Source: Guillardia theta CCMP2712
Taxonomy: Eukaryota; Protista; Cryptophyta
Length of the DNA stretch: 43,803 nucleotides
Assembly: GCF_000315625.1 (NCBI RefSeq)
Contig: NW_005434548.1
Coordinates: 153,997 to 197,799 of the forward strand
Direction: 5' to 3'
In this document: piece by piece, positions 3,041 through 42,166 of the stretch
Layout: each line of letters opens with the position of its first letter
Numbering within the stretch: the stretch's first letter is position 1
The notes under the pieces: generated by a model
The model's input: the letters and a program-made list of their open reading frames with translations, nothing else
Told to the model about the DNA's origin: nothing
The model's database searches: none
Made by a program: the position numbers and the translations under genes

Positions 3041-6000
3041 CTAAAACTTCTTCTCCTCTAACAGTTGTTCCGCACTATCAAAGGCTCTGGAGATGCTGGA
3101 CACCAGCTGCTCTCGTTTCTTCTCGTTCCCTTGCAAGATCGTTGACCTCTCAATCGTCGTCAGGAGCTGATTCAAGTTGGTCGCATCTGGGAGTATAAAC
3201 TTCTGATTTTTGATGTTGTCGTCAAGTGCTTTCTTGTACGCTGCCTTGGCGCGTTTGATCTCTTCGCGGAACCTCTCATACTCCTCGTACGCCTTCTGCT
3301 CTCTCTGCTGGACAGCTGCTGAGTCTCTCTTCTCCTTGCCCATCTGTTGCCACTGGTCAACGGCGCCAGTGAGTCTGGATGACAAGTGCTTCAGCTGCTT
3401 CCCGCTCGAGCTCTCGAGGCTGGCGATGTCACGACGAAGCGCGCCGACTTGCTGAGTGAAGGGAAACACGGGCGGGGGGTGAGCTCGGTAAGAGCTGTTC
3501 TTGATCTCGTCGGTCAGGCTGTTGACTTTCTCTGCCAGGATCTGCACGTCATACTCGAGCTTGGCCTTGCCGATCTTGTCGGCAGACGAGCGGATCTTGT
3601 CGTTGACCTGCTGGATGAGACCGTCGTACCTGCTGTCCTGCATCTGCTCCATCTTGGTCTTGATCTGCTGCAGCTTAGAGCCGTTGGGACTGCCGAACCG
3701 CTCCGAGGCGATCAGTCTCTCTACCGCCATATCGTAATCCAGCAGCGCCTCGTGCAGCTCCAGCATGAGCTGATTGGCCTGCTGGTTGGCTTTACGTTCT
3801 TGGCTGAGCTGGGCGACTTCTTTAGCGCTCTGGAGCCTGGAGGAGAGATCACTTTGAAGCTTGTCGACTTGGTTGGTAAGTATGCTCAGCGAGGCCTCGT
3901 CGAGGGTTTTTTGCGAGGACTGTATCTCCTTTCTGACTTTGTCCAGGGGTGACATGTCAAGCGGCGAGAAGTCTTGCCTGTTGATCTTTCTGTCGAGCGT
4001 TGACCTTAGATTTCTCTCTGCTGTGCTGAAATGTTTGTTCACCTGAAGCATTTTGGTCTTCCACTTTGGATCGACAGACGAGATTCTTTCCCTTTGTTTC
4101 AACGCTTCTCGCTTTGCCGTCGCAAGCCTCTCAAGCAAGTGTTTCTTATCGTGTTCAACAAGCTCACACCGCTCGACATCGTTCTGCAGGCCCTGCAGCA
4201 TGTCTCTGTACATAGCGTCCACGTCGGGGTTGGCCTGCTCCATCACCTTGTAGTGAAAGGATCGGACACACCTGTCAGTTCTCTGACTCATGGCATTGAA
4301 GAACATCTGCATCGCTTTCTGCCGGGTGGTTCGAATCTTGGCGAGGAGATCTGAGCGTTGTGACTCAGAGATGTCAGGGTCGACTTTGATGCTCATCTTG
4401 AGCATCCCCAAGTGATTGAAGTCAGGAAGCTGGACAGAGTCCAAGTCGTGCCCGATCATCTCCCACACATCCGAATCGATCTTGGCGATCGCGGTATCCA
4501 CCTCCCTCACAAGCTTCGCAACGTAATGCTCACTGTTTCGTTCCAGGAGGCACTGGGTAAAGTTGCGTTGAAGGGATTTCACTTCAGCAATGACTCTGTC
4601 AGCTCCAGGCACTTTGCACTTCCTGAGCACCTTTAGGAGGTTCATTTCCTCTTCACATGCAGCTGCAAAATCTTCGCGCGTTGCAGTTGTTTGTTCAAAT
4701 CTAGTTTCAATCTTTCTGGCTGCATTTCGTTTGACTCTACGAAGAATTGACTTCAGATCCGACTGGATGGATTGAGTGAGAGGCAAGCCCAGGTGCAAGG
4801 CTTCGTACACCCGACAGCGAGTCGTTTGGAAGAGATCCATCAGGTCGTCTGCGTTGGTGAGCCCTGTGTCCTCTTTGAAGGCATGCATCGCGCTTGTGGC
4901 CACCAGGTTCTTGGCGAGAGTCTCGCAAGCCATCTTGTCGTCGCTGTTGGAGCTGAGCAGGGAGAGGAACATCTCGCGCAGGTTCTCGATGGTGACCTGG
5001 TCCCCGCCCTCATCAAGCTTGGGTGTCTTGAGCACGAGGGGGATGACAGCTTCCAGGCCGGAGAGGTCCTCGTCCTTGACGGAGAAGATGGACCGCAGGC
5101 TCTGCAGCAGCTCTCTCAGCACATCCCCGCGTCCCTCAGCAGAAGCGATGCTGGCGTAGGGGAAGGCGGCGACGATGGTGACCGACTTAGCGACGGTGAT
5201 GATCCCGCTGATGTTGATGGCGTTGGCGATCTCGAATGTCTTGCCACGCGTATCCTTGAAGCCGGGGCAGTCACAGATCGCCACCTTCCGTTTGGCGTCT
5301 CTGTACACGCCTGGCACGTCAGTCTGCGACTTTCCGCGGTCATGTCCGATGACGAAGATCTCGTTGCCATGGTCATCAGTGATGGGATCGCCCTCTGATA
5401 CGAGGTGGACAGCGCCTCTTTCTTTCTTTGCATGCAAGGAAGACATTCCTTTGATCATGGCAGTGAGGATGGTACTCTTGCCTATGCCAGTTTCACCGAT
5501 GACCATGATGCAATGCATTCCAGCAGCTTTCTTGATCTGTTTGGAAGTTGTCTGCATTTGTTTGTGAAACTCATCTAAGTCCAACTTTGTTGTATCCTCT
5601 GATTCCGTGTCATCGATTTCAGAGCGTGGGGATCCTCGTTGTGTATCACATAATTGATGATCTTCCATCTGATTGATAGAGTGCTCTTGCGATGTTTCGT
5701 TGATGCATTTATGATTGTGACGTCCAGCTTTCTTCTGTTTTGATGGTCGGGATTCGAGGAATTGAGGTTGCTCTAGAATCAAGTTTTGATGGTGATGAGG
5801 CACTAATGAGCAAGTTATTTCTGTTTTGTTCTCATGGATGCTCGAACAAAATGACTCAAGCATGGACGTCTGTGATTCACAGTTAAGATCAAGATCAAAT
5901 CAAAATCTCAGATGTTCATACATCACACGTGTTTTCTTCGACAAGATTTCCATCTTCTCGCTCACGTTTTCTATTTCTGTCCTCGGTTGTTGACTTAGCA

Positions 6001-8562
6001 ACTGCCACAAGCTCCTTAGTTCTTGATCATCGCAAACTTACATCATGTTTCACCTGTTCGCAGCTGCATTGCCGGTCTGGTCCATTCTGCCGTGAAATGA
6101 AGCTGTGACAGCCGTTGAAAGGAAGTGCTCAGTGTGTCAACCCAAGTCTCTCTGATCGCGGTCCATTCCTCCTGGTTGTCACCATCGCTGATGAGCCAAC
6201 CGCTGCTGCTCATCCAAGTCATGAGCTGAGAGACATGAGATCCTGTCAGAGCGCCTTCTTTGTGCTTTCTTGCACTTCTTATCACGAAATTACCAAAGAA
6301 AGCGCTGTTTAGTTCGCTCATCTTCAAGATCACCATGTTGCTGAATGCCTTGTCCAATCTTAAAGAATGGCCATCGAGCAAAATACTCCGACCTTCATCA
6401 GACTGAAAGAAAGTTTTCAAGAATTCTTCCATACGATGCAACGCTTGCTCTAAACTTGTGTTCACGCAGTAACAATCGGGCATGATCTGCTCTCTCCACA
6501 TCTGCAATGTTCCAAGTGAATGTCGCTTGAGCTCGGTCATAACGGTGTAGTCTAGAATTCCTATGGAAAGTTTTTCATTCGAAATTTTTATCCCCTTGGA
6601 GATCCTCCATGACTCAAATGATGGAGAAACAATCTTATACCAAAGCAAATCATTATTCAATTTCTCGAAATCGGATTTGCGAAATTTAGATGCTTTTGAT
6701 CTGTACTGAGAGAGCAACCATTCAGGATCAGACTTTGTGTCTCTTGACCATAAGAAGAAAATCAGGAATGATGAAAGAAAAAAGCAAGAATGAGAATCAT
6801 CGTCGAATATCGAGGTATCTGTTTCACATAGATTCTTCAATACTTCATCGGGAATGACTCCAACAACCCCTGGTTCACTGGAATAAGCTACCAAAACCGT
6901 CGTGCTATCTAAAAGATGCTCTGAGACTGAAGATGAAGGGATTGAGAGGCTTTCAACCAGATCAGCGATAGCCTTGCTGACGTTCTGAATCTGATCTCTT
7001 GACTCCTTTGTTTTGATAAGGCAAAGGTCTCGTGGGATTTGATGTGGGTTCAAAATCACTGCAGAATTCTGTTCTCCATTGGTTCTTGTAACACATGACA
7101 ACATGGTTTCTCGCATCTTCCTGTTATTTCCAAAGATTCCATATTGGTAATCCATGATGGCATTGAAGAACTCTGAACCTTCCACCTGGCAGCCATGATA
7201 AGTATTCCTGCAAGAAATACACCAACACCACGAAGTCGGAACAGACTCGCTGCTAGGTCTTCGAGCAAGAAATTGAGGACAACTTGACTGAGAATATGTG
7301 TCCGTGATGACAACGAAAGTCATATCATTTTCTTCAAGCATGTTTCTGTCTTCAAATTCTCTCAGCAACGAGAATAGTGTGTTTAGGCTTAGAGAATAGT
7401 CTTGAAATTCAACCTTTGTCTTGCTGTCAAACTTGAAAGTGCATGGAGCAAAGAACATCTCATTATCATGAGTCACACTCCTCCCAGCTAAAAAGACTAC
7501 AATCAGCTCGGGTAGAGCTTGGTCGTAACATCGCAAACTCTCTCGTATGAACGTGATCAAATCTGTCTTGCTCCCTGGGTCCTTCAGGATCGAGGAATGT
7601 GCTCTGGAGCTTTGAGAAAGAGATCTGTCAAACTGAGTTGCTTCTTGCACAAAGCATGAAAGTCTGTAATCTTCGGTTGCATAGTTGTCAGCACCGATGC
7701 TAAGCCCAACAACCCTTGGTGCCTCGAGAAAAATGACTTCATAGGAATAGGGAAGGACATCTTTGATTGGAACGACTTCTTGATCATTCCTGGAAGAGTG
7801 TCCGATCTTGCTTGCACTGAAAAACAAAATTTCAGCTGAGCAAACTCATGGCAAGCAAGAGTATTCATAATTCAAGAAATAGAATGGAGCACTGCCTAAT
7901 TATTATTTTCATCATGAGAACTTCAAATCTCAGTTACAATCTTCATACGTCTAGTACCAATTCTTTCGAGCGAAAAGTTTTCTTGCCTTCTCGCTTCGTG
8001 TTGCAAGGCATAATAGTTTCATCAGAGACAGAGGGCATTCACCACGATGCTGCTGCTGATTGTTCTTCTCGGAGAAGATTCCATCCCTGTCAAACACAAC
8101 GTAACTTTTTTTCGTTTCTGTTCTTCTTGACATTTCGTTTTTCCTCTCAATACTTTGGACCACTGCAATGTCAAAATCCCTTGCGCGGTTGAAAATGGGC
8201 TTCGAGGATGAGCGATTTGACCATTCATCAGATGTGAAGATTTCAAGACACACATCTTGCAGCTCATCATCTTCAGTATGGAAGAAATAAAGACGCGCAA
8301 GAGCATCAACCCAAGCTCCCCGAGGAGTTTCAGGAACAAGGCCCTCTCTTGCATAAGGTCTATCAACAATGCATGACAACCTCGTCGACCCGCTTGCGAC
8401 TCTCTCATATAAATCATCCAAGATGACCTTGTCTGCTACAAATGCACCCACTCCTTCGGGAGATTGCTGGGTGTTGCAAATAGCAAAGCGTCTTAGAAGA
8501 TCCGAAGAAATGCGACAAACATGCTCGCGGTCCATAAATTTTTTTCTGCATTGAACGATCAA
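3041..8562 (-). CDS. Predicted fusion gene: unknown N-terminal region + inactive caspase-fold (peptidase C14-like) domain + TRAFAC-type P-loop GTPase + long coiled coil (true start probably ~8.6-8.7 kb)
   Basis: ORFs 7951-8562, 6043-7827 and 3041-5863 join in frame through GT-AG introns 7817-7957, 6087-6141, 6015-6053 and 5870-5921 (bridging exons NGPDRQCSCEQ and ELVAVAKSTTEDRNRKREREDGNLVEENTCD). GTPase motifs VIGETGIGKST and DCPGFKDTRG. Caspase-fold pattern VVGLSIGADNY...LIVVFLAGRS...FVVITDTYS. Confidence 0.7.
3089..5539 (-). repeat. Left arm of ~2.45-kb inverted duplication (GTPase + coiled-coil coding region)
   Basis: Reverse complement of 9418-11865. Alternative-frame ORF translations are identical between arms (e.g. 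4776-5159 vs 9798-10181; 5116-5433 vs 9524-9841). Confidence 0.97.
7017..7715 (-). other. Caspase/metacaspase-like (C14) domain lacking the catalytic dyad
   Basis: Order and spacing match ALxIGNxxY / xVFxxAGHG / xVILDACR, but the His position is R (AGRS, ~7477-7488) and the Cys position is Y (DTYS, ~7291-7303). Confidence 0.65.
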
Positions 8563-8899
8563 GCAAAGGCAATGCTAACTATTCAACAACAGGTAGAAAA
8601 CTCGCAATTTTCTACTTGAGACTAAAACGATATGAAATCTCTTATCTCTGCCTCGCACCTTGCACCACTTCTACGACAACATCTTGCATGGCTTTCATCC
8701 TGCATGTGTTGCTCATGGTGAAGTAAGTACAAAATTCTCTCTTGTTACTGCCATCAGCATTTCCTTCACGCTTTCTTTAACCTCCTACCGCGTCGCTCTC
8801 TTGGTATCTTGCTTCTTTCCTCCTCCTCCCCTCTTCACTTCTCCTCCTCCTCCCCTGCTACCTTCCCTCAGACCATGCTTGTGTGCATTCCAAAGTTCC

Positions 8900-9240
8900 C
8901 ACCAACCTGCATCACCCCACCCTACTGACATCGACCTCGCGCCAAAAAGTCGCCCTCCACCCCAGCATCCTACTCTGAGTACCCACCCTTCTTCATGGTT
9001 GCCTACCCCCACTCGATCTATATGATAGTTCCTAGCTCAAGTTTACGACCTTCTCGTGGCCGCAAGGGTACTGGGGCTGAGTCCAAGGTGAGTGTGCATT
9101 GCAGGGAGGGGTGGTATATGATTGAGCAAAGTGGGGGTGATAGAGGTAAGTTGGTGGGGTCATCCAATGTAGGATGCAATGCCGATGGGGGTAGTGTAAT
9201 TCATCAGTCATCGGTAACGAGGGGTAGGGTAGTTCACAAA
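8900..9240. promoter_or_regulatory. Probable bidirectional promoter between the divergent GTPase genes
   Basis: CACCCC/TACCC-rich left half switches near 9040 to a GGGGTG/GGGTAG-rich right half, so each sense strand is G-rich just upstream of its gene. Confidence 0.45.
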
Positions 9241-9249
9241 AGCGCAGAT

Positions 9250-11988
9250 ATGGGAGACGAAGGAAGAACGAAAAGAGGACGAGAACAAAAGAAACAAAGC
9301 CAGGAAGCAAATACACCCAAGAAAGCAAGAAACAGTCTAGAAGATGCTGAAGAGCAAGAAACAAAGATCGACATTGACATCCAAACCCTCAATGAGCTGG
9401 TTCATGCTTCATCAGAGCAGATCAAAAAAGCTGCTGGAATGCATTGCATCATGGTCATCGGCAAGACCGGAATAGGCAAGAGTACCATCCTCACTGCCAT
9501 GATCAAAGGAATGTCTTCCTTGCATGCAAAGAAAGAAAGAGGCGCTGTCCACCTCGTATCAGAGGGCGATCCCATCACTGATGACCATGGCAACGAGATC
9601 TTCGTCATCGGACATGACCGCGGAAAGTCGCAGACTGACGTGCCAGGCGTGTACAGAGACGCCAAACGGAAGGTGGCGATCTGTGACTGCCCCGGCTTCA
9701 AGGATACGCGTGGCAAGACATTCGAGATCGCCAACGCCATCAACATCAGCGGGATCATCACCGTCGCTAAGTCGGTCACCATCGTCGCCGCCTTCCCCTA
9801 CGCCAGCATCGCTTCTGCTGAGGGACGCGGGGATGTGCTGAGAGAGCTGCTGCAGAGCCTGCGGTCCATCTTCTCCGTCAAGGACGAGGACCTCTCCGGC
9901 CTGGAAGCTGTCATCCCCCTCGTGCTCAAGACACCCAAGCTTGATGAGGGCGGGGACCAGGTCACCATCGAGAACCTGCGCGAGATGTTCCTCTCCCTGC
10001 TCAGCTCCAACAGCGACGACAAGATGGCTTGCGAGACTCTCGCCAAGAACCTGGTGGCCACAAGCGCGATGCATGCCTTCAAAGAGGACACAGGGCTCAC
10101 CAACGCAGACGACCTGATGGATCTCTTCCAAACGACTCGCTGTCGGGTGTACGAAGCCTTGCACCTGGGCTTGCCTCTCACTCAATCCATCCAGTCGGAT
10201 CTTCAAGAAATTTACAATGACTTGAAGGAGACAGCTAATGTGAAAATGGCTCAGGTTTCCATGGATCAGGCTGAGCCAGGAGATTTCGCAGCTGCATGTG
10301 AAGAAGAAATGAACTTCCTAAAGGTGCTCAGGAAGTACAAGGTGCCTGGAGCTGACAGAGTTCTGAACGCGATTCGAGCGACAACGTATAGAAGAAAAAA
10401 GACTGTAAAACAACAGAATACAAACAACAAAGAAAAAAAGCTTACGAGGGAGCTGGATAACGCTATCGCCAAGATTGATTCGGATGTGTGGGAGATGATC
10501 GGGCACGACTTGGACTCTGTCCAGCTTCCTGACTTCAATCACTTGGGGAAGCTCAAGATGAGCATCAAAGACGACCCTGACATCTCTGAGTCACAACGCT
10601 CAGATCTCCTCGCCAAGATTCGAACCACCCGGCAGAAAGCGATGCAGATGTTCTTCAATGCCATGAGTCAGAGAACTGACAGGTGTGTCCGATCCTTTCA
10701 CTACAAGGTGATGGAGCAGGCCAACCCCGACGTGGACGCTATGTACAGAGACATGCTGCAGGGCCTGCAGAACGATGTCGAGCGGTGTGAGCTTGTTGAA
10801 CACGATAAGAAAGACTTGCTTGAGAGGCTTGCGACGGCAAAACGAGAAGCGTTGAAACAAAGGGAAAGAATCTCGTCTGTCGATCCAAAGTGGAAGACCA
10901 AAATGAATGAAATCAGCTCAATTCTGAGCACAGCAGAGAGAAATCTAAGGTCAACGCTCGACAGAAAGATCAACAGACAAGACTTCTCGCCGCTTGACAT
11001 GTCACCCCTGGACAAAGTCAGAAAGGAGATACAGTCCTCGCAAAAAACCCTCGACGAGGCCTCGCTGAGCATACTTACCAACCAAGTCGACAAGCTTCAA
11101 AGTGATCTCTCCTCCAGGCTCCAGAGCGCTAAAGAAGTCGCCCAGCTCAGCCAAGAACGTAAAGCCAACCAGCAGGCCAATCAGCTCATGCTGGAGCTGC
11201 ACGAGGCGCTGCTGGATTACGATATGGCGGTAGAGAGACTGATCGCCTCGGAGCGGTTCGGCAGTCCCAACGGCTCTAAGCTGCAGCAGATCAAGACCAA
11301 GATGGAGCAGATGCAGGACAGCAGGTACGACGGTCTCATCCAGCAGGTCAACGACAAGATTCGATCGTCTGCCGACAAGATCGGCAAGGCCAAGCTCGAG
11401 TATGACGTGCAGATCCTGACAGAGAAAGTCAACAGCCTGACCGACGAGATCAAGAACAGCTCTTACCGAGCTCACCCCCCGCCCGTGTTTCCCTTCACTC
11501 AGCAAGTCGGCGCGCTTCGTCGTGACATCGCCAGCCTCGAGAGCTCGAGCGGGAAGCAGCTGAAGCACTTGTCATCCAGACTCACTGGCGCCGTTGACCA
11601 GTGGCAACAGATGGGCAAGGAGAAGAGAGACTCAGCAGCTGTCCAGCAGAGAGAGCAGAAGGCGTACGAGGAGTATGAGAGGTTCCGCAAAGAGATCAAA
11701 CGCGCCAAGGCAGCGTACAAGAAAGCGTTTTTTGACAACATGGATAGGGAGAAGTTGATGCTTCCAGATGCGACCAACTTGAATCAGCTCCTGACGACGA
11801 TTGAGAGGTCAACGATCTTGCAAGGGAACGAGAAGAAACGAGAGCAGCTGGTGTCCAGCATCTCCGATACGCTTTCCCAAGCGAGCTCACAGCTAGATGA
11901 CTTTAAAGCACGACATAAGGAAATGGAGATATCTCGGCGGCGAGAGGCTCAAGCTTCTGGCCATAATCAGTCATGCGTTGTTTGTTGA
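9250..11988 (+). CDS. Large P-loop GTPase (AIG1/GIMAP/MMR_HSR1-like G domain) with coiled coil and C-terminal CaaX (CVVC)
   Basis: Within ORF 8995-11988; likely start ATG 9250 (MGDEGRTKR). G1 VIGKTGIGKST, G2-like SQT, G3 DCPG. Several hundred aa of helical/charged tail; ends ...HNQSCVVC*. Confidence 0.85.
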   Translation: MGDEGRTKRGREQKKQSQEANTPKKARNSLEDAEEQETKIDIDIQTLNELVHASSEQIKKAAGMHCIMVIGKTGIGKSTILTAMIKGMSSLHAKKERGAVHLVSEGDPITDDHGNEIFVIGHDRGKSQTDVPGVYRDAKRKVAICDCPGFKDTRGKTFEIANAINISGIITVAKSVTIVAAFPYASIASAEGRGDVLRELLQSLRSIFSVKDEDLSGLEAVIPLVLKTPKLDEGGDQVTIENLREMFLSLLSSNSDDKMACETLAKNLVATSAMHAFKEDTGLTNADDLMDLFQTTRCRVYEALHLGLPLTQSIQSDLQEIYNDLKETANVKMAQVSMDQAEPGDFAAACEEEMNFLKVLRKYKVPGADRVLNAIRATTYRRKKTVKQQNTNNKEKKLTRELDNAIAKIDSDVWEMIGHDLDSVQLPDFNHLGKLKMSIKDDPDISESQRSDLLAKIRTTRQKAMQMFFNAMSQRTDRCVRSFHYKVMEQANPDVDAMYRDMLQGLQNDVERCELVEHDKKDLLERLATAKREALKQRERISSVDPKWKTKMNEISSILSTAERNLRSTLDRKINRQDFSPLDMSPLDKVRKEIQSSQKTLDEASLSILTNQVDKLQSDLSSRLQSAKEVAQLSQERKANQQANQLMLELHEALLDYDMAVERLIASERFGSPNGSKLQQIKTKMEQMQDSRYDGLIQQVNDKIRSSADKIGKAKLEYDVQILTEKVNSLTDEIKNSSYRAHPPPVFPFTQQVGALRRDIASLESSSGKQLKHLSSRLTGAVDQWQQMGKEKRDSAAVQQREQKAYEEYERFRKEIKRAKAAYKKAFFDNMDREKLMLPDATNLNQLLTTIERSTILQGNEKKREQLVSSISDTLSQASSQLDDFKARHKEMEISRRREAQASGHNQSCVVC
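9418..11865 (+). repeat. Right arm of ~2.45-kb inverted duplication
   Basis: Reverse complement of 3089-5539; 3 nt shorter, matching a one-residue indel in the first variable block. Confidence 0.97.
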
Positions 11989-12668: not shown

Positions 12669-20126
<7,458 letters not shown>

Positions 20127-41747: not shown

Positions 41748-41800
41748 TAGGGTTTAGGGTTTAGGGTTTAGGGTTTAGGGTTTAGGGTTTAGGGTTTAGG
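41748..41800 (+). repeat. Interstitial telomeric repeat (TTTAGGG)n, ~7.5 units
   Basis: TAGGG(TTTAGGG)6TTTAGG, Arabidopsis-type telomere motif. Confidence 0.97.
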
Positions 41801-42166
41801 AGGCGCCGTTATTTTCGGCAGGCGCCGTTATTTTCGGCAGGCGCCGTTATTTTCGGCAGGCGCCGTTATTTTCGGCAGGCGCCGTTGTTTTCGGCAGGCG
41901 CCGTTATTTTCGGCAGGTGCCGTTATTTTCGGCAGGCGCCGTTATTTTCGGCAGGCGCCGTTATTTTCGGCAGTAGGCGCCGTTATTTTCGGCAGGCGCC
42001 GTTATTTTCGGCAGGCGCCGTTATTTTCGGCAGGCGCCGTTATTTTCGGCAGGCGCCGTTATTTTCGGCAGGCGCCGTTGTTTTCGGCAGGCGCCGTTAT
42101 TTTCGGCAGGCGTTGTTATTTTCGGCAGGCGCCGTTATTTTCGGCAGGCGCCGTTATTTTCGGCAG
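41801..42166 (+). repeat. 19-bp tandem satellite x~19
   Basis: Unit AGGCGCCGTTATTTTCGGC with few variants and one 3-nt insertion. Confidence 0.98.

What the first reader, a model, noticed from the sequence alone, without database searches (positions are those of the whole stretch)
3041..11988. Head-to-head pair of large GTPases, one with a pseudo-caspase and one prenylated: candidate paired sensor/executor immune system
Seen: two divergent genes share a ~2.45-kb GTPase+coiled-coil module (3089-5539 / 9418-11865) but differ at both ends. Copy A carries a long N-terminal extension with a caspase fold and lacks CaaX; copy B has a short N-terminus and ends in CVVC. Established: divergently paired immune genes where one partner carries an integrated domain are known for plant NLRs (RRS1/RPS4, RGA4/RGA5), and animal GBPs (GTPase-helical-CaaX) polymerise on membranes and recruit caspase-4. 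Inference: the two products could hetero-oligomerise through their identical coiled coils, B giving membrane anchoring and A a caspase-fold adaptor or decoy. I know of no such system described in algae.
Basis: partly seen in the sequence, partly recalled or inferred. Interest (0 to 1): 0.9.

Follow-up and report, generated by a model that had tools for sequence, protein, structure and literature searches.

The report
Paired algal GTPases, one with dead caspase
Two back-to-back genes in a probable cryptophyte alga encode almost identical large GTPases, one fused to a catalytically dead caspase-like module and one ending in a lipid-anchor motif; gene conversion keeps them alike, which fits a partnership possibly in cell death or defence, but that partnership is untested.

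Summary
Inverted repeats at 3089-4516/10438-11865 (97%) and 4755-5539/9418-10202 (99%) belong to two divergent genes.

**Copy A.** Spliced RNA contigs from two studies join four exons into a 1749-aa ORF. It runs: unknown N-domain, caspase-fold domain with the His/Cys dyad replaced (R, Y), helical domain, GTPase, long helical tail.

**Copy B.** It is 912 aa: GTPase, tail, and a C-terminal CVVC.

- The GTPase is not GBP-type. It is a TRAFAC G domain, tied closest to Toc34/GIMAP7.
- A continuous coiled coil is not supported.
- The pair is old. A related metagenome organism has both an A-type tail and a B-type tail ending CIVC.
- The near-identity comes from gene conversion. 1726 nt of perfect A=B identity carry 60 differences from the relative.
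- Short type-specific patches escape conversion.

**Context.** The caspase module belongs to a family of at least 29 loci in this genome, joined or adjacent to NACHT-WD40, kinase, ART-ankyrin and dsRBD parts.

**Binding and expression.** A G-interface dimer is predicted (0.49 against 0.03 for the best control). Co-expression is unresolved. The sensor/executor immune reading stays inference.

The scan had already noted parts of this stretch (s1-434722, s1-434797).

The parts
3041..8847 (-). Copy A transcription unit: four exons (8847-7958, 7816-6054, 6001-5922, 5869-3041). CDS from the ATG at 8535 to the stop at 3041, 1749 aa.
   Evidence: Spliced RNA contigs in runs X1 and X2; open spliced frame.
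7958..8535 (-). A exon 1 coding part: N-terminal domain of about 190 aa, fold unknown. It is also found upstream of the caspase-module paralogues.
   Evidence: No Pfam hit; best Atlas score 0.75; one homologue detected by search, on C64; unaligned ORFs of about 200 aa ending ..SFSRRNR lie just upstream of several other paralogues.
7050..7715 (-). A pseudo-caspase domain (Peptidase_C14 fold). Catalytic His is replaced by Arg (FLAGRS) and Cys by Tyr (ITDTYS).
   Evidence: Alignment A2; PF00656 hits 11 of 17 family members but not A; Foldseek matches MALT1 and caspase-3/7; Atlas neighbours; dN/dS 0.39 against the relative.
6054..6918 (-). A conserved helical domain that follows the caspase or CHAT domain in all family members.
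   Evidence: Alignment A2 with invariant W/F/K columns; model secondary structure; dN/dS 0.47.
4739..5566 (-). A G domain (P-loop GETGIGKS at about 5492-5515; DCPG switch II).
   Evidence: dN/dS 0.09.
3041..4738 (-). A helical tail, ending LLEEKKF with no CaaX.
   Evidence: the A-type end is conserved in the relative (P0003, LLEETKL).
8848..9249 (.). Shared divergent upstream region between the 5' end of the A mRNA contig and the annotated B start codon. Bidirectional promoter use is inferred.
   Evidence: A contig reaches 8847; B model P0001 starts at 9250.
9250..11988 (+). Copy B CDS (912 aa; the frame is open from 8995): short N-terminus, G domain 9382-10284 (P-loop GKTGIGKS), helical tail.
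   Evidence: 30% of the words of 8900-9417 occur in three putative RNA runs.
11974..11985 (+). CVVC, a CaaX-like prenylation motif at the B C-terminus.
   Evidence: CIVC in the relative's B-type tail; three prenyltransferase beta loci in the genome.
10203..10437 (+). Divergent block i of B (counterpart in A: 4517-4754), in frame, about 44% aa identity to A.
10906..10926 (+). Divergent patch ii (B NEISSIL, A LQVNKHF). The B type is conserved in the relative.
11728..11760 (+). Divergent patch iii (B FFDNMDREKLM, A LDDNIKNQKFI).
9463..9465 (+). Codon for Lys72 of B (Glu in A, 5510-5512). It is the only A/B difference inside the G domain proper (P0001 57-318) and lies in the predicted dimer interface.

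Best explanation
This is an old, divergently arranged pair of paralogous large GTPases in a probable cryptophyte, about 30 kb from telomere-type repeats.

**Shown**
- Both have a TRAFAC G domain closest in fold to Toc34/GIMAP, followed by a helical tail of about 570-600 aa.
- A is additionally fused, through three spliced introns, to a tripartite N-terminal module: unknown domain, caspase fold without the catalytic dyad, helical domain.
- At least 29 other loci in the genome hold relatives of this module, 14 of them covering most of its length. In the 14 paralogues aligned, 11 have a caspase domain and 3 a CHAT domain. The dyad motifs are kept, except the Cys in L016 (DAGRE).
- B ends in a CaaX-like CVVC.
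- The duplication predates the split from a relative with about 6% nucleotide divergence. After the split, gene conversion erased all A/B differences over 1726 nt. Both termini and short internal patches stay type-specific across the two lineages.

**Inferred mechanism**
- GTP-dependent dimerisation across the nucleotide face lets A and B form mixed oligomers.
- B's prenyl group places them on a membrane.
- A's dead-caspase module acts as a non-catalytic adaptor or regulator, in the manner of cFLIP, towards the active caspase-module paralogues.
- The process served is a regulated cell-death or defence response.
For: - **Repeat and ORFs:**
- **Spliced fusion transcript in two studies:**
- **Caspase fold and lost dyad:**
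- **Purifying selection against the relative:** pseudo-caspase dN/dS 0.39, G domain 0.09.
- **G-domain family and fold:** 1244 homologues; MMR_HSR1 hits 47 of 55 aligned members; VIA Z 13.5 for Toc34 and 13.4 for GIMAP7.
- **Module family and its partner domains:** NACHT-WD40 and CHAT-ankyrin lie in the same open frame as the module; kinase-ARM, ART-ankyrin and dsRBD lie in adjacent same-strand ORFs.
- **B-type patch ii and a tail ending CIVC in the relative:**
- **Gene conversion:** 60 sites where A=B differ from the relative inside 1726 nt of perfect A=B identity.
- **Prenyltransferase beta genes are present:**
- **G-domain homodimer prediction (ESMFold2, GTP riding along):**
  - Score 0.49, best control 0.03.
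  - The mark was reached by 21 of 30 proteins solved as pairs and 0 of 23 solved as single chains. For eukaryotes the counts are 17 of 29 and 0 of 30.
  - Runs agree in at least 72% of contacts, and the partner pLDDT is at least 65.
  - The interface covers the P-loop and switch regions.
Against: - No experiment or expression series links the locus to infection or cell death.
- Co-expression is not shown. X1 and X2, where A is spliced, hold 0.00 of B's unique 5' words. B's words appear in other runs where A's share is low.
- Gene conversion in a subtelomeric inverted repeat can occur without any functional partnership.
- The dimer prediction may reflect memory of solved GIMAP, Toc and septin dimers. 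It was a homodimer of B's G domain, not full-length A with B.
- The head-to-head arrangement could not be checked in any relative, because the contigs are too short. Two JGI scans were empty.
- The Hanusia homologue of the caspase module is a 591-aa protein without a GTPase, so the fusion may be young or that transcript may be incomplete.
- No G4 NKxD motif is evident, so GTP specificity is assumed.
Confidence: 0.4

Rival explanations
1. The two genes are independent paralogues. A subtelomeric inverted duplication is kept similar by mechanical gene conversion. A and B work separately, for example B as a membrane-bound GTPase in trafficking or organelle dynamics and A in another pathway, and there is no paired system.
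For: - The locus lies about 30 kb from TTTAGGG repeats near the contig end.
- Conversion tracts are evident.
- A and B were not co-detected in the same RNA assemblies.
- The other roughly 7 family GTPases in the genome are unpaired and have diverse architectures.
Against: - Type-specific patches and both termini resist conversion and are conserved by type in a relative. This points to selection for two distinct but compatible proteins.
- The G domain is predicted to dimerise and is the same in A and B at all but one residue of P0001 57-318. If that holds, mixed dimers would be hard to avoid wherever both proteins are present.
- The two start sites lie within about 400 bp of each other.
Confidence: 0.3
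2. The pair has a housekeeping structural role and is not immune. It forms a septin- or GIMAP-like membrane scaffold, and the dead caspase domain is only a protein-binding fold.
For: - The G-domain profile's best PDB sequence hits are septins.
- The G domain is under strong purifying selection (dN/dS 0.09).
- A transcripts were assembled from cultures with no recorded challenge.
Against: - The family is close to lineage-restricted. Only a near relative and Hanusia have the module.
- The module family is expanded and tandemly arrayed, and it is combined with NACHT-WD40, ART, kinase and dsRBD parts. That pattern is typical of conflict systems rather than housekeeping.
Confidence: 0.2
3. Copy B is an assembly artefact or a decaying duplicate.
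For: - DNA contigs of run X9 break near the repeat boundary (9389-9430).
- X1 and X2 hold no words from B's 5' region.
Against: - B has an intact 912-aa frame with in-frame divergent blocks.
- B's patch ii and CaaX tail recur in an independent metagenome assembly of a relative.
- 30% of the words of window 8900-9417 (B's upstream region and unique 5' coding part) occur in three putative RNA runs from two studies.
Confidence: 0.04

Closest known systems
GIMAP / AIG1 (IAN) GTPases and Toc34/Toc159 (septin-related TRAFAC clade)
   Same: They are the best structural matches of the G domain (Toc34 Z 13.5, GIMAP7 Z 13.4). Dimerisation across the nucleotide-binding face is predicted. Like GIMAP/AIG1, the family occurs in lineage-specific multi-domain and multi-copy forms, and helical extensions and membrane anchoring are known in some GIMAPs (my own knowledge).
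   Different: A and B give no AIG1 Pfam hit, and only 2 of 55 family members do. EngB and Era score within 1 Z unit, so the assignment is tied. The tail is a helical region of about 570-600 aa. The anchor motif is CaaX rather than a transmembrane helix. No GIMAP is known to be fused to a caspase fold.
Guanylate-binding proteins (GBP1/2/5) and the GBP coat that recruits caspase-4
   Same: The layout is large G domain, long helical domain, then C-terminal CaaX. G-domain dimerisation is predicted, and there is a link to a caspase-fold protein.
   Different: The G domain is not of the dynamin/GBP type. There is no GBP or GBP_C Pfam hit, and GBP1 ranks below GIMAP/Toc in Foldseek and is absent from the VIA top 50. 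The caspase fold is fused in cis to the paralogue and is catalytically dead. Any likeness would be convergent.
Pseudo-caspases and paracaspases (cFLIP, MALT1)
   Same: A has the caspase/paracaspase fold, with MALT1 as the top Foldseek match. As in cFLIP, both catalytic residues are lost while the domain stays under purifying selection.
   Different: There are no death-fold or Ig domains. The domain is fused to a helical domain and a GTPase. The related active enzymes are p20-only metacaspase-like or orthocaspase-like proteins. Such proteins were mentioned for Guillardia theta without detail in PMC3734836.
Head-to-head paired plant NLRs with an integrated decoy (RRS1/RPS4, RGA5/RGA4)
   Same: The genes are divergently arranged, and one partner carries an extra, non-catalytic domain related to active host proteins.
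   Different: There is no NB-ARC/NACHT domain and no LRR. The partners here are kept near-identical by gene conversion, whereas NLR pairs are divergent. Interdependence is untested.

Membership tests
GBP (dynamin superfamily) | GBP-type large G domain (Pfam GBP, PF02263) followed by the GBP_C helical domain | tested here: not met
   The Pfam scan at E<=1 lists no GBP or GBP_C hit for A or B. Structural matches to GBP1 are weaker than those to GIMAP/Toc34.
GBP (dynamin superfamily) | C-terminal CaaX box in some members | tested here: met
   B ends in CVVC. The relative's B-type tail ends in CIVC.
GIMAP/AIG1 | AIG1 domain (PF04548) above the curated threshold | tested here: not met
   A and B give no AIG1 hit. 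2 of 55 family members hit it, and the paralogue on C34 scores 24.9 bits against a cut-off of 27.
GIMAP/AIG1 | GIMAP/Toc-like G-domain fold that dimerises across the nucleotide site | tested here: inconclusive
   Z is 13.4-13.5 for GIMAP7 and Toc34, but EngB scores 13.2. The homodimer prediction passes, 0.49 against 0.03, but this may reflect memory of solved dimers.
TRAFAC-class GTPase | G1 (GxxxxGKS/T), G3 (DxxG) and G4 (N/TKxD) motifs | tested here: inconclusive
   G1 is present (GKTGIGKS in B, GETGIGKS in A) and so is G3 (DCPG). No clear NKxD is seen: the sequence has LKTPKLD and the family consensus is ILLGIT..P.
Peptidase C14 (caspase, metacaspase, paracaspase) | Caspase/hemoglobinase fold | tested here: met
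   Foldseek E is 3e-7 to 1e-5 for MALT1, caspase-3/7 and CED-3. Ten of ten Atlas neighbour clusters are PF00656. 11 of 17 aligned homologues hit PF00656.
Peptidase C14 (caspase, metacaspase, paracaspase) | Catalytic His-Cys dyad | tested here: not met
   A has Arg and Tyr at the dyad columns, and the Hanusia homologue has Arg and Phe. The aligned paralogues have a His motif (AGHG/AGHA, ACHG in the CHAT type) and DACR or LCW, except L016, which has DAGRE.
Paired NLR with integrated decoy | STAND NTPase (NB-ARC or NACHT) in both partners | tested here: not met
   The P-loop domain is a TRAFAC G domain. The only NACHT or nSTAND Pfam signals are sub-threshold matches at the P-loop.
Paired NLR with integrated decoy | Head-to-head arrangement and functional interdependence | not testable with these tools
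   The arrangement is met in this genome. Interdependence needs genetics.
Prenylated CaaX proteins | Cys-aliphatic-aliphatic-X at the extreme C-terminus, with the modifying enzymes present | tested here: met
   The motif is CVVC here and CIVC in the relative. Three prenyltransferase beta loci are present. Actual lipidation was not tested.

The most novel reading that the evidence does not exclude
This would be a convergent, GBP-like defence machine in a unicellular alga. A farnesylated GIMAP-like GTPase (B) and its gene-conversion-locked partner (A) co-polymerise on a target membrane. A's dead caspase module then nucleates or restrains the active caspase-module paralogues (ART-ankyrin, kinase, NACHT-WD40), giving an inflammasome-like cell-death switch outside animals and plants. 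The conserved type-specific patches and the Lys/Glu difference in the P-loop interface would set the A:B stoichiometry.
Probability: 0.12. Interest if true: 0.9.

Novelty: new variant of a known kind. Interest (0 to 1): 0.62.

Why it matters
Cell-death and immune machinery in unicellular algae is poorly known beyond metacaspases. This locus gives a concrete, testable pair: a prenylatable large GTPase and a near-identical partner fused to a pseudo-caspase.

The pair sits within a cryptophyte-specific family in which the caspase or CHAT module is joined or adjacent to NACHT-WD40, kinase, ADP-ribosyltransferase, ankyrin and dsRNA-binding parts.

It is also a clean natural example of concerted evolution with selectively protected patches. 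Those patches point to the residues that distinguish the two partners.

If the partnership is real, it would show that the theme of GTPase scaffolds recruiting caspase-fold proteins arose independently outside animals.

Tried and rejected
- **PDB sequence searches** with the G domain and with the module gave nothing above chance.
- **Pfam on A and B** gave only sub-threshold P-loop matches.
- **PADLOC** gave only P-loop-level LeoBC and mad8 hits, which I do not count as membership.
- **A profile search with the module alignment** found only the near relative and Hanusia. Longer fusions lie outside the tool's length window.
- **The exon-1 domain** has no Pfam hit, and its best Atlas score is 0.75.
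- **A donor for B's block i elsewhere in the genome:** none found.
- **Two JGI metagenome scans**, with A's exon-1 domain and with B, found no relatives. Pairing in relatives could therefore not be checked beyond three short ENA contigs.
- **Crude heptad scoring** does not support one continuous coiled coil.
- **GBP membership** is rejected on Pfam and fold ranking.
- **NLR-pair membership** is rejected for lack of a STAND domain.
- **Misassembly** is rejected because B-specific patches recur in an independent assembly.
- **Literature searches** found p20-only metacaspase-like proteins mentioned for Guillardia (PMC3734836, PMC5756287) but no description of this fusion or pair.
- **L045/P0157 is a mosaic.** Its 5' part, block i and patch iii are A-type; patch ii and the tail are B-type. 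This may be a k-mer assembly path across identical tracts. I use it only as evidence that B-type patches exist in the relative.
Full report
**1. Observation**

The window holds a two-part inverted repeat: 3089-4516 against 10438-11865 (1428 nt, 97%), and 4755-5539 against 9418-10202 (785 nt, 99%). The arms lie inside two long divergent ORFs: 3041-5863 on the minus strand and 8995-11988 on the plus strand. The second ends in CVVC. The window is the last 43.8 kb of a 197.8-kb contig in an 87.1-Mb, 669-contig genome. TTTAGGG repeats lie at 41753-41801, so the locus is subtelomeric. The only outside homologue of the upstream module with a species name is from the cryptophyte Hanusia phi. The genome is therefore probably a cryptophyte near Guillardia/Hanusia; this is my inference and no tool stated it.

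**2. Gene structure of A**

I laid four runs on 5440-9520. Contigs of X1 and X2 come from two studies and carry two organism labels, and both match the window without a single differing letter. They skip 5870-5921, 6002-6053 and 7817-7957, each with GT..AG on the minus strand, and they run from 8847 into the GTPase. The contigs of X9 are unspliced, so X9 is DNA. Joining the exons gives one open frame of 1749 aa, from the ATG at 8535 to the stop at 3041.

**3. The N-terminal module**

- The 590-aa exon-2 product has at least 29 hits in the same genome, including a tandem array on contig C97.
- In the alignment, the paralogues carry FFYAGHG and (V)IDACR(E). A has FLAGRS and ITDTYS, and the Hanusia protein has LACRC and ADTFSH.
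- PF00656 (caspase domain) hits 11 of 17 aligned members, CHAT hits 3, and neither hits A.
- An AlphaFold model (pLDDT 69.6) shows the beta-alpha-beta core.
- Its best PDB matches are MALT1 paracaspase, caspase-3/7, CED-3 and a bacterial caspase homologue.
- All ten nearest Atlas clusters are Peptidase_C14.
- Against the relative's orthologue, dN/dS is 0.39 for the caspase part and 0.47 for the helical part. The dead domain is therefore maintained.

Pfam finds the following in the same frame as paralogue modules, or in the next ORF on the same strand:

- NACHT plus WD40, in a single 1695-aa frame.
- CHAT plus ankyrin, in a single 1428-aa frame.
- Kinase plus ARM.
- Kinase, then Arb2.
- ADP-ribosyltransferase plus ankyrin.
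- Two dsRBDs.
- ARM/RCC1.

For ORFs separated by short gaps the fusion is inferred; it is shown only for A and for the single-frame cases. An ORF of about 190-200 aa also sits upstream of several paralogues. Homology to A's exon-1 domain was detected only for the one on C64. Its fold is unknown.

**4. The GTPase**

- HMMER against 1.84 billion representatives gave 1244 hits at E<=0.001.
- A 55-sequence alignment has the consensus GNTGAGKST ... IGH..S.T ... CDCPGF.DNRG ... N.ANA.NI.
- Members hit MMR_HSR1 (47 of 55), RsgA (31), Dynamin_N (13), AIG1 (2), Septin (1) and IIGP (1).
- The AlphaFold model is confident (pLDDT 87.6).
- Foldseek ranks GIMAP7 first, and GBP1 appears lower.
- VIA-align gives Toc34 Z 13.5, GIMAP7 13.4, EngB 13.2 and GIMAP2 13.2, which is a tie. 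GBP is not in the top 50.

It is therefore a TRAFAC G domain nearest the Toc/GIMAP group and is not a GBP. No NKxD motif is evident, so GTP specificity is assumed. The genome has about 8-9 members of this G-domain family with varied architectures, and only A carries the caspase module. A crude heptad score against shuffles flags only short segments of the tail. I therefore call it a helical tail.

**5. A against B, and a relative**

At the protein level A and B differ in the following places:

- Both termini.
- One P-loop residue: Lys72 in B, Glu in A.
- Two blocks just after the G domain (P0001 319-344 and 372-404).
- Two short patches (553-559 and 827-837).
- A few single sites.

Three contigs come from two metagenome assemblies of one ENA project (PRJEB17505) and belong to a relative 92-94% identical in DNA:

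- **L009** carries the module.
- **L010** carries an A-type GTPase ending LLEETKL. L009 and L010 overlap by 212 nt at 90% identity. L045 independently carries the module's 3' part and the A-type GTPase start on one contig. The module-then-GTPase order thus appears conserved.
- **L045** encodes P0157, which has a B-type patch ii and a B-type tail ending CIVC.

The evidence for conversion is as follows:

- Five tracts totalling 1726 nt are perfectly identical between A and B, yet they hold 60 sites that differ from the relative.
- B's patch ii matches L045 at 48 of 51 positions, against 37 for A.
- B's tail matches L045 at 92 of 123 positions, against 29 for A.
- The flanks within 45 nt of the relative's B-type patch carry the relative's own substitutions. 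An assembly chimera cannot explain this.

The duplication is therefore older than the split. Gene conversion has homogenised most of the length in each lineage, and the termini and patches are protected. No donor for block i exists elsewhere in the genome. CaaX survives as CVVC and CIVC, although the 40-residue tail around it is only about 40% identical.

**6. Binding and expression**

- *Dimer prediction.* I folded two copies of B's G domain with GTP.
  - The score was 0.49 and the best of three controls 0.03.
  - That mark was reached by 21 of 30 proteins solved as pairs and 0 of 23 solved as single chains. For eukaryotes the counts are 17 of 29 and 0 of 30.
  - The runs agree in at least 72% of contacts, and the partner pLDDT is at least 65.
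  - The interface is the P-loop, the switch regions and residues 139-150 and 188-210.
  - Because related dimers are solved, this shows likeness rather than binding.
- *The one G-domain difference.* It sits in this interface next to Glu147 of the other chain. Whether it biases homo- against hetero-dimers is an idea, not a result.
- *Prenylation machinery.* Three prenyltransferase beta loci exist in the genome.
- *Expression.*
  - A is assembled and spliced in X1 and X2.
  - B's unique 5' stretch has 0.00 of its words in those runs.
  - It has 0.30 in X4, X6 and X15, which are putative RNA from two studies and where A's share is low.
  - Both A contigs end exactly at 4755, where A/B identity stops. 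That would fit a graph branch caused by B-type reads.
  - I could not test this.

**7. Interpretation**

The anatomy and evolutionary history are well supported. Three points fit two proteins selected to remain compatible yet distinct:

- The G domain and most of the tail are identical.
- Distinct ends and patches are protected from conversion.
- The genes share an upstream region.

Mixed G-interface oligomers on a membrane are the simplest mechanism. The family context suggests cell death or defence: expansion, tandem arrays, and NACHT, ART, kinase and dsRBD partners. No functional data exist. Independent paralogues homogenised by subtelomeric conversion remain a serious rival.

**8. Comparison and novelty**

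The pair is analogous to GBPs (G domain, helical domain, CaaX, a link to a caspase-fold protein) and to cFLIP-type pseudo-caspases, but it is a member of neither family. It is not an NLR pair. Papers mention p20-only metacaspase-like proteins in Guillardia theta without detail (PMC3734836, PMC5756287). My searches found no description of this fusion or pair. I rate it a new variant of known kinds.

**9. Operators' notes**

Read laying was given 4081 letters.

Noticed in passing
G000 contig C97:155000-232000 (loci L036-L044, L016, L018, L020, L022-L024): A tandem array gives at least 11 hits to the module, six of them near full-length copies. The layout is an N-domain, a caspase domain with intact dyad motifs except the Cys in L016 (DAGRE), a helical domain, and a downstream ORF. 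By similarity to the C64 copy (ART plus ankyrin), the downstream ORFs are probably ADP-ribosyltransferase-ankyrin parts.
   Followed up: partly
G000 C118:110000-119900 (L030, 1533-6617, minus strand): A single 1695-aa open frame combines a CHAT-type caspase-like domain, the same helical domain as in A, and then NACHT, pentapeptide and WD40 repeats. This is an NLR-like protein with a protease head.
   Followed up: partly
G000 C52:288000-297900 (L028, 2080-3987 and 4018-4866, plus strand): A caspase-module paralogue is followed 30 nt downstream, on the same strand, by an ORF with two dsRNA-binding motifs.
   Followed up: no
window 41753-41801: Five overlapping matches to three TTTAGGG units (none expected by chance) lie about 2 kb from the contig end, so the GTPase pair is subtelomeric.
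   Followed up: partly
window 13822-15175 and 15405-15600; 57-805: These stretches hold long triplet-based low-complexity tracts (GAT/GGT, TCC) and purine-rich GAGG tracts flanking the locus. Some lie in open frames (Asp/Gly-rich, Glu-rich).
   Followed up: no
L010:1-340 against window 6178-5860: The relative's contig L010 is 100% identical to the window across the intron and mini-exon region, but only 89-98% identical in the coding sequence that follows. The cause could be unusual conservation, a chimeric metagenome contig, or a mix of strains.
   Followed up: no
G000 C50:456500-466400 (L035): A G-domain paralogue (1217-aa frame, G domain at about residue 680) is followed directly by a 1438-aa frame with a SecA_DEAD-like helicase hit.
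   Followed up: no
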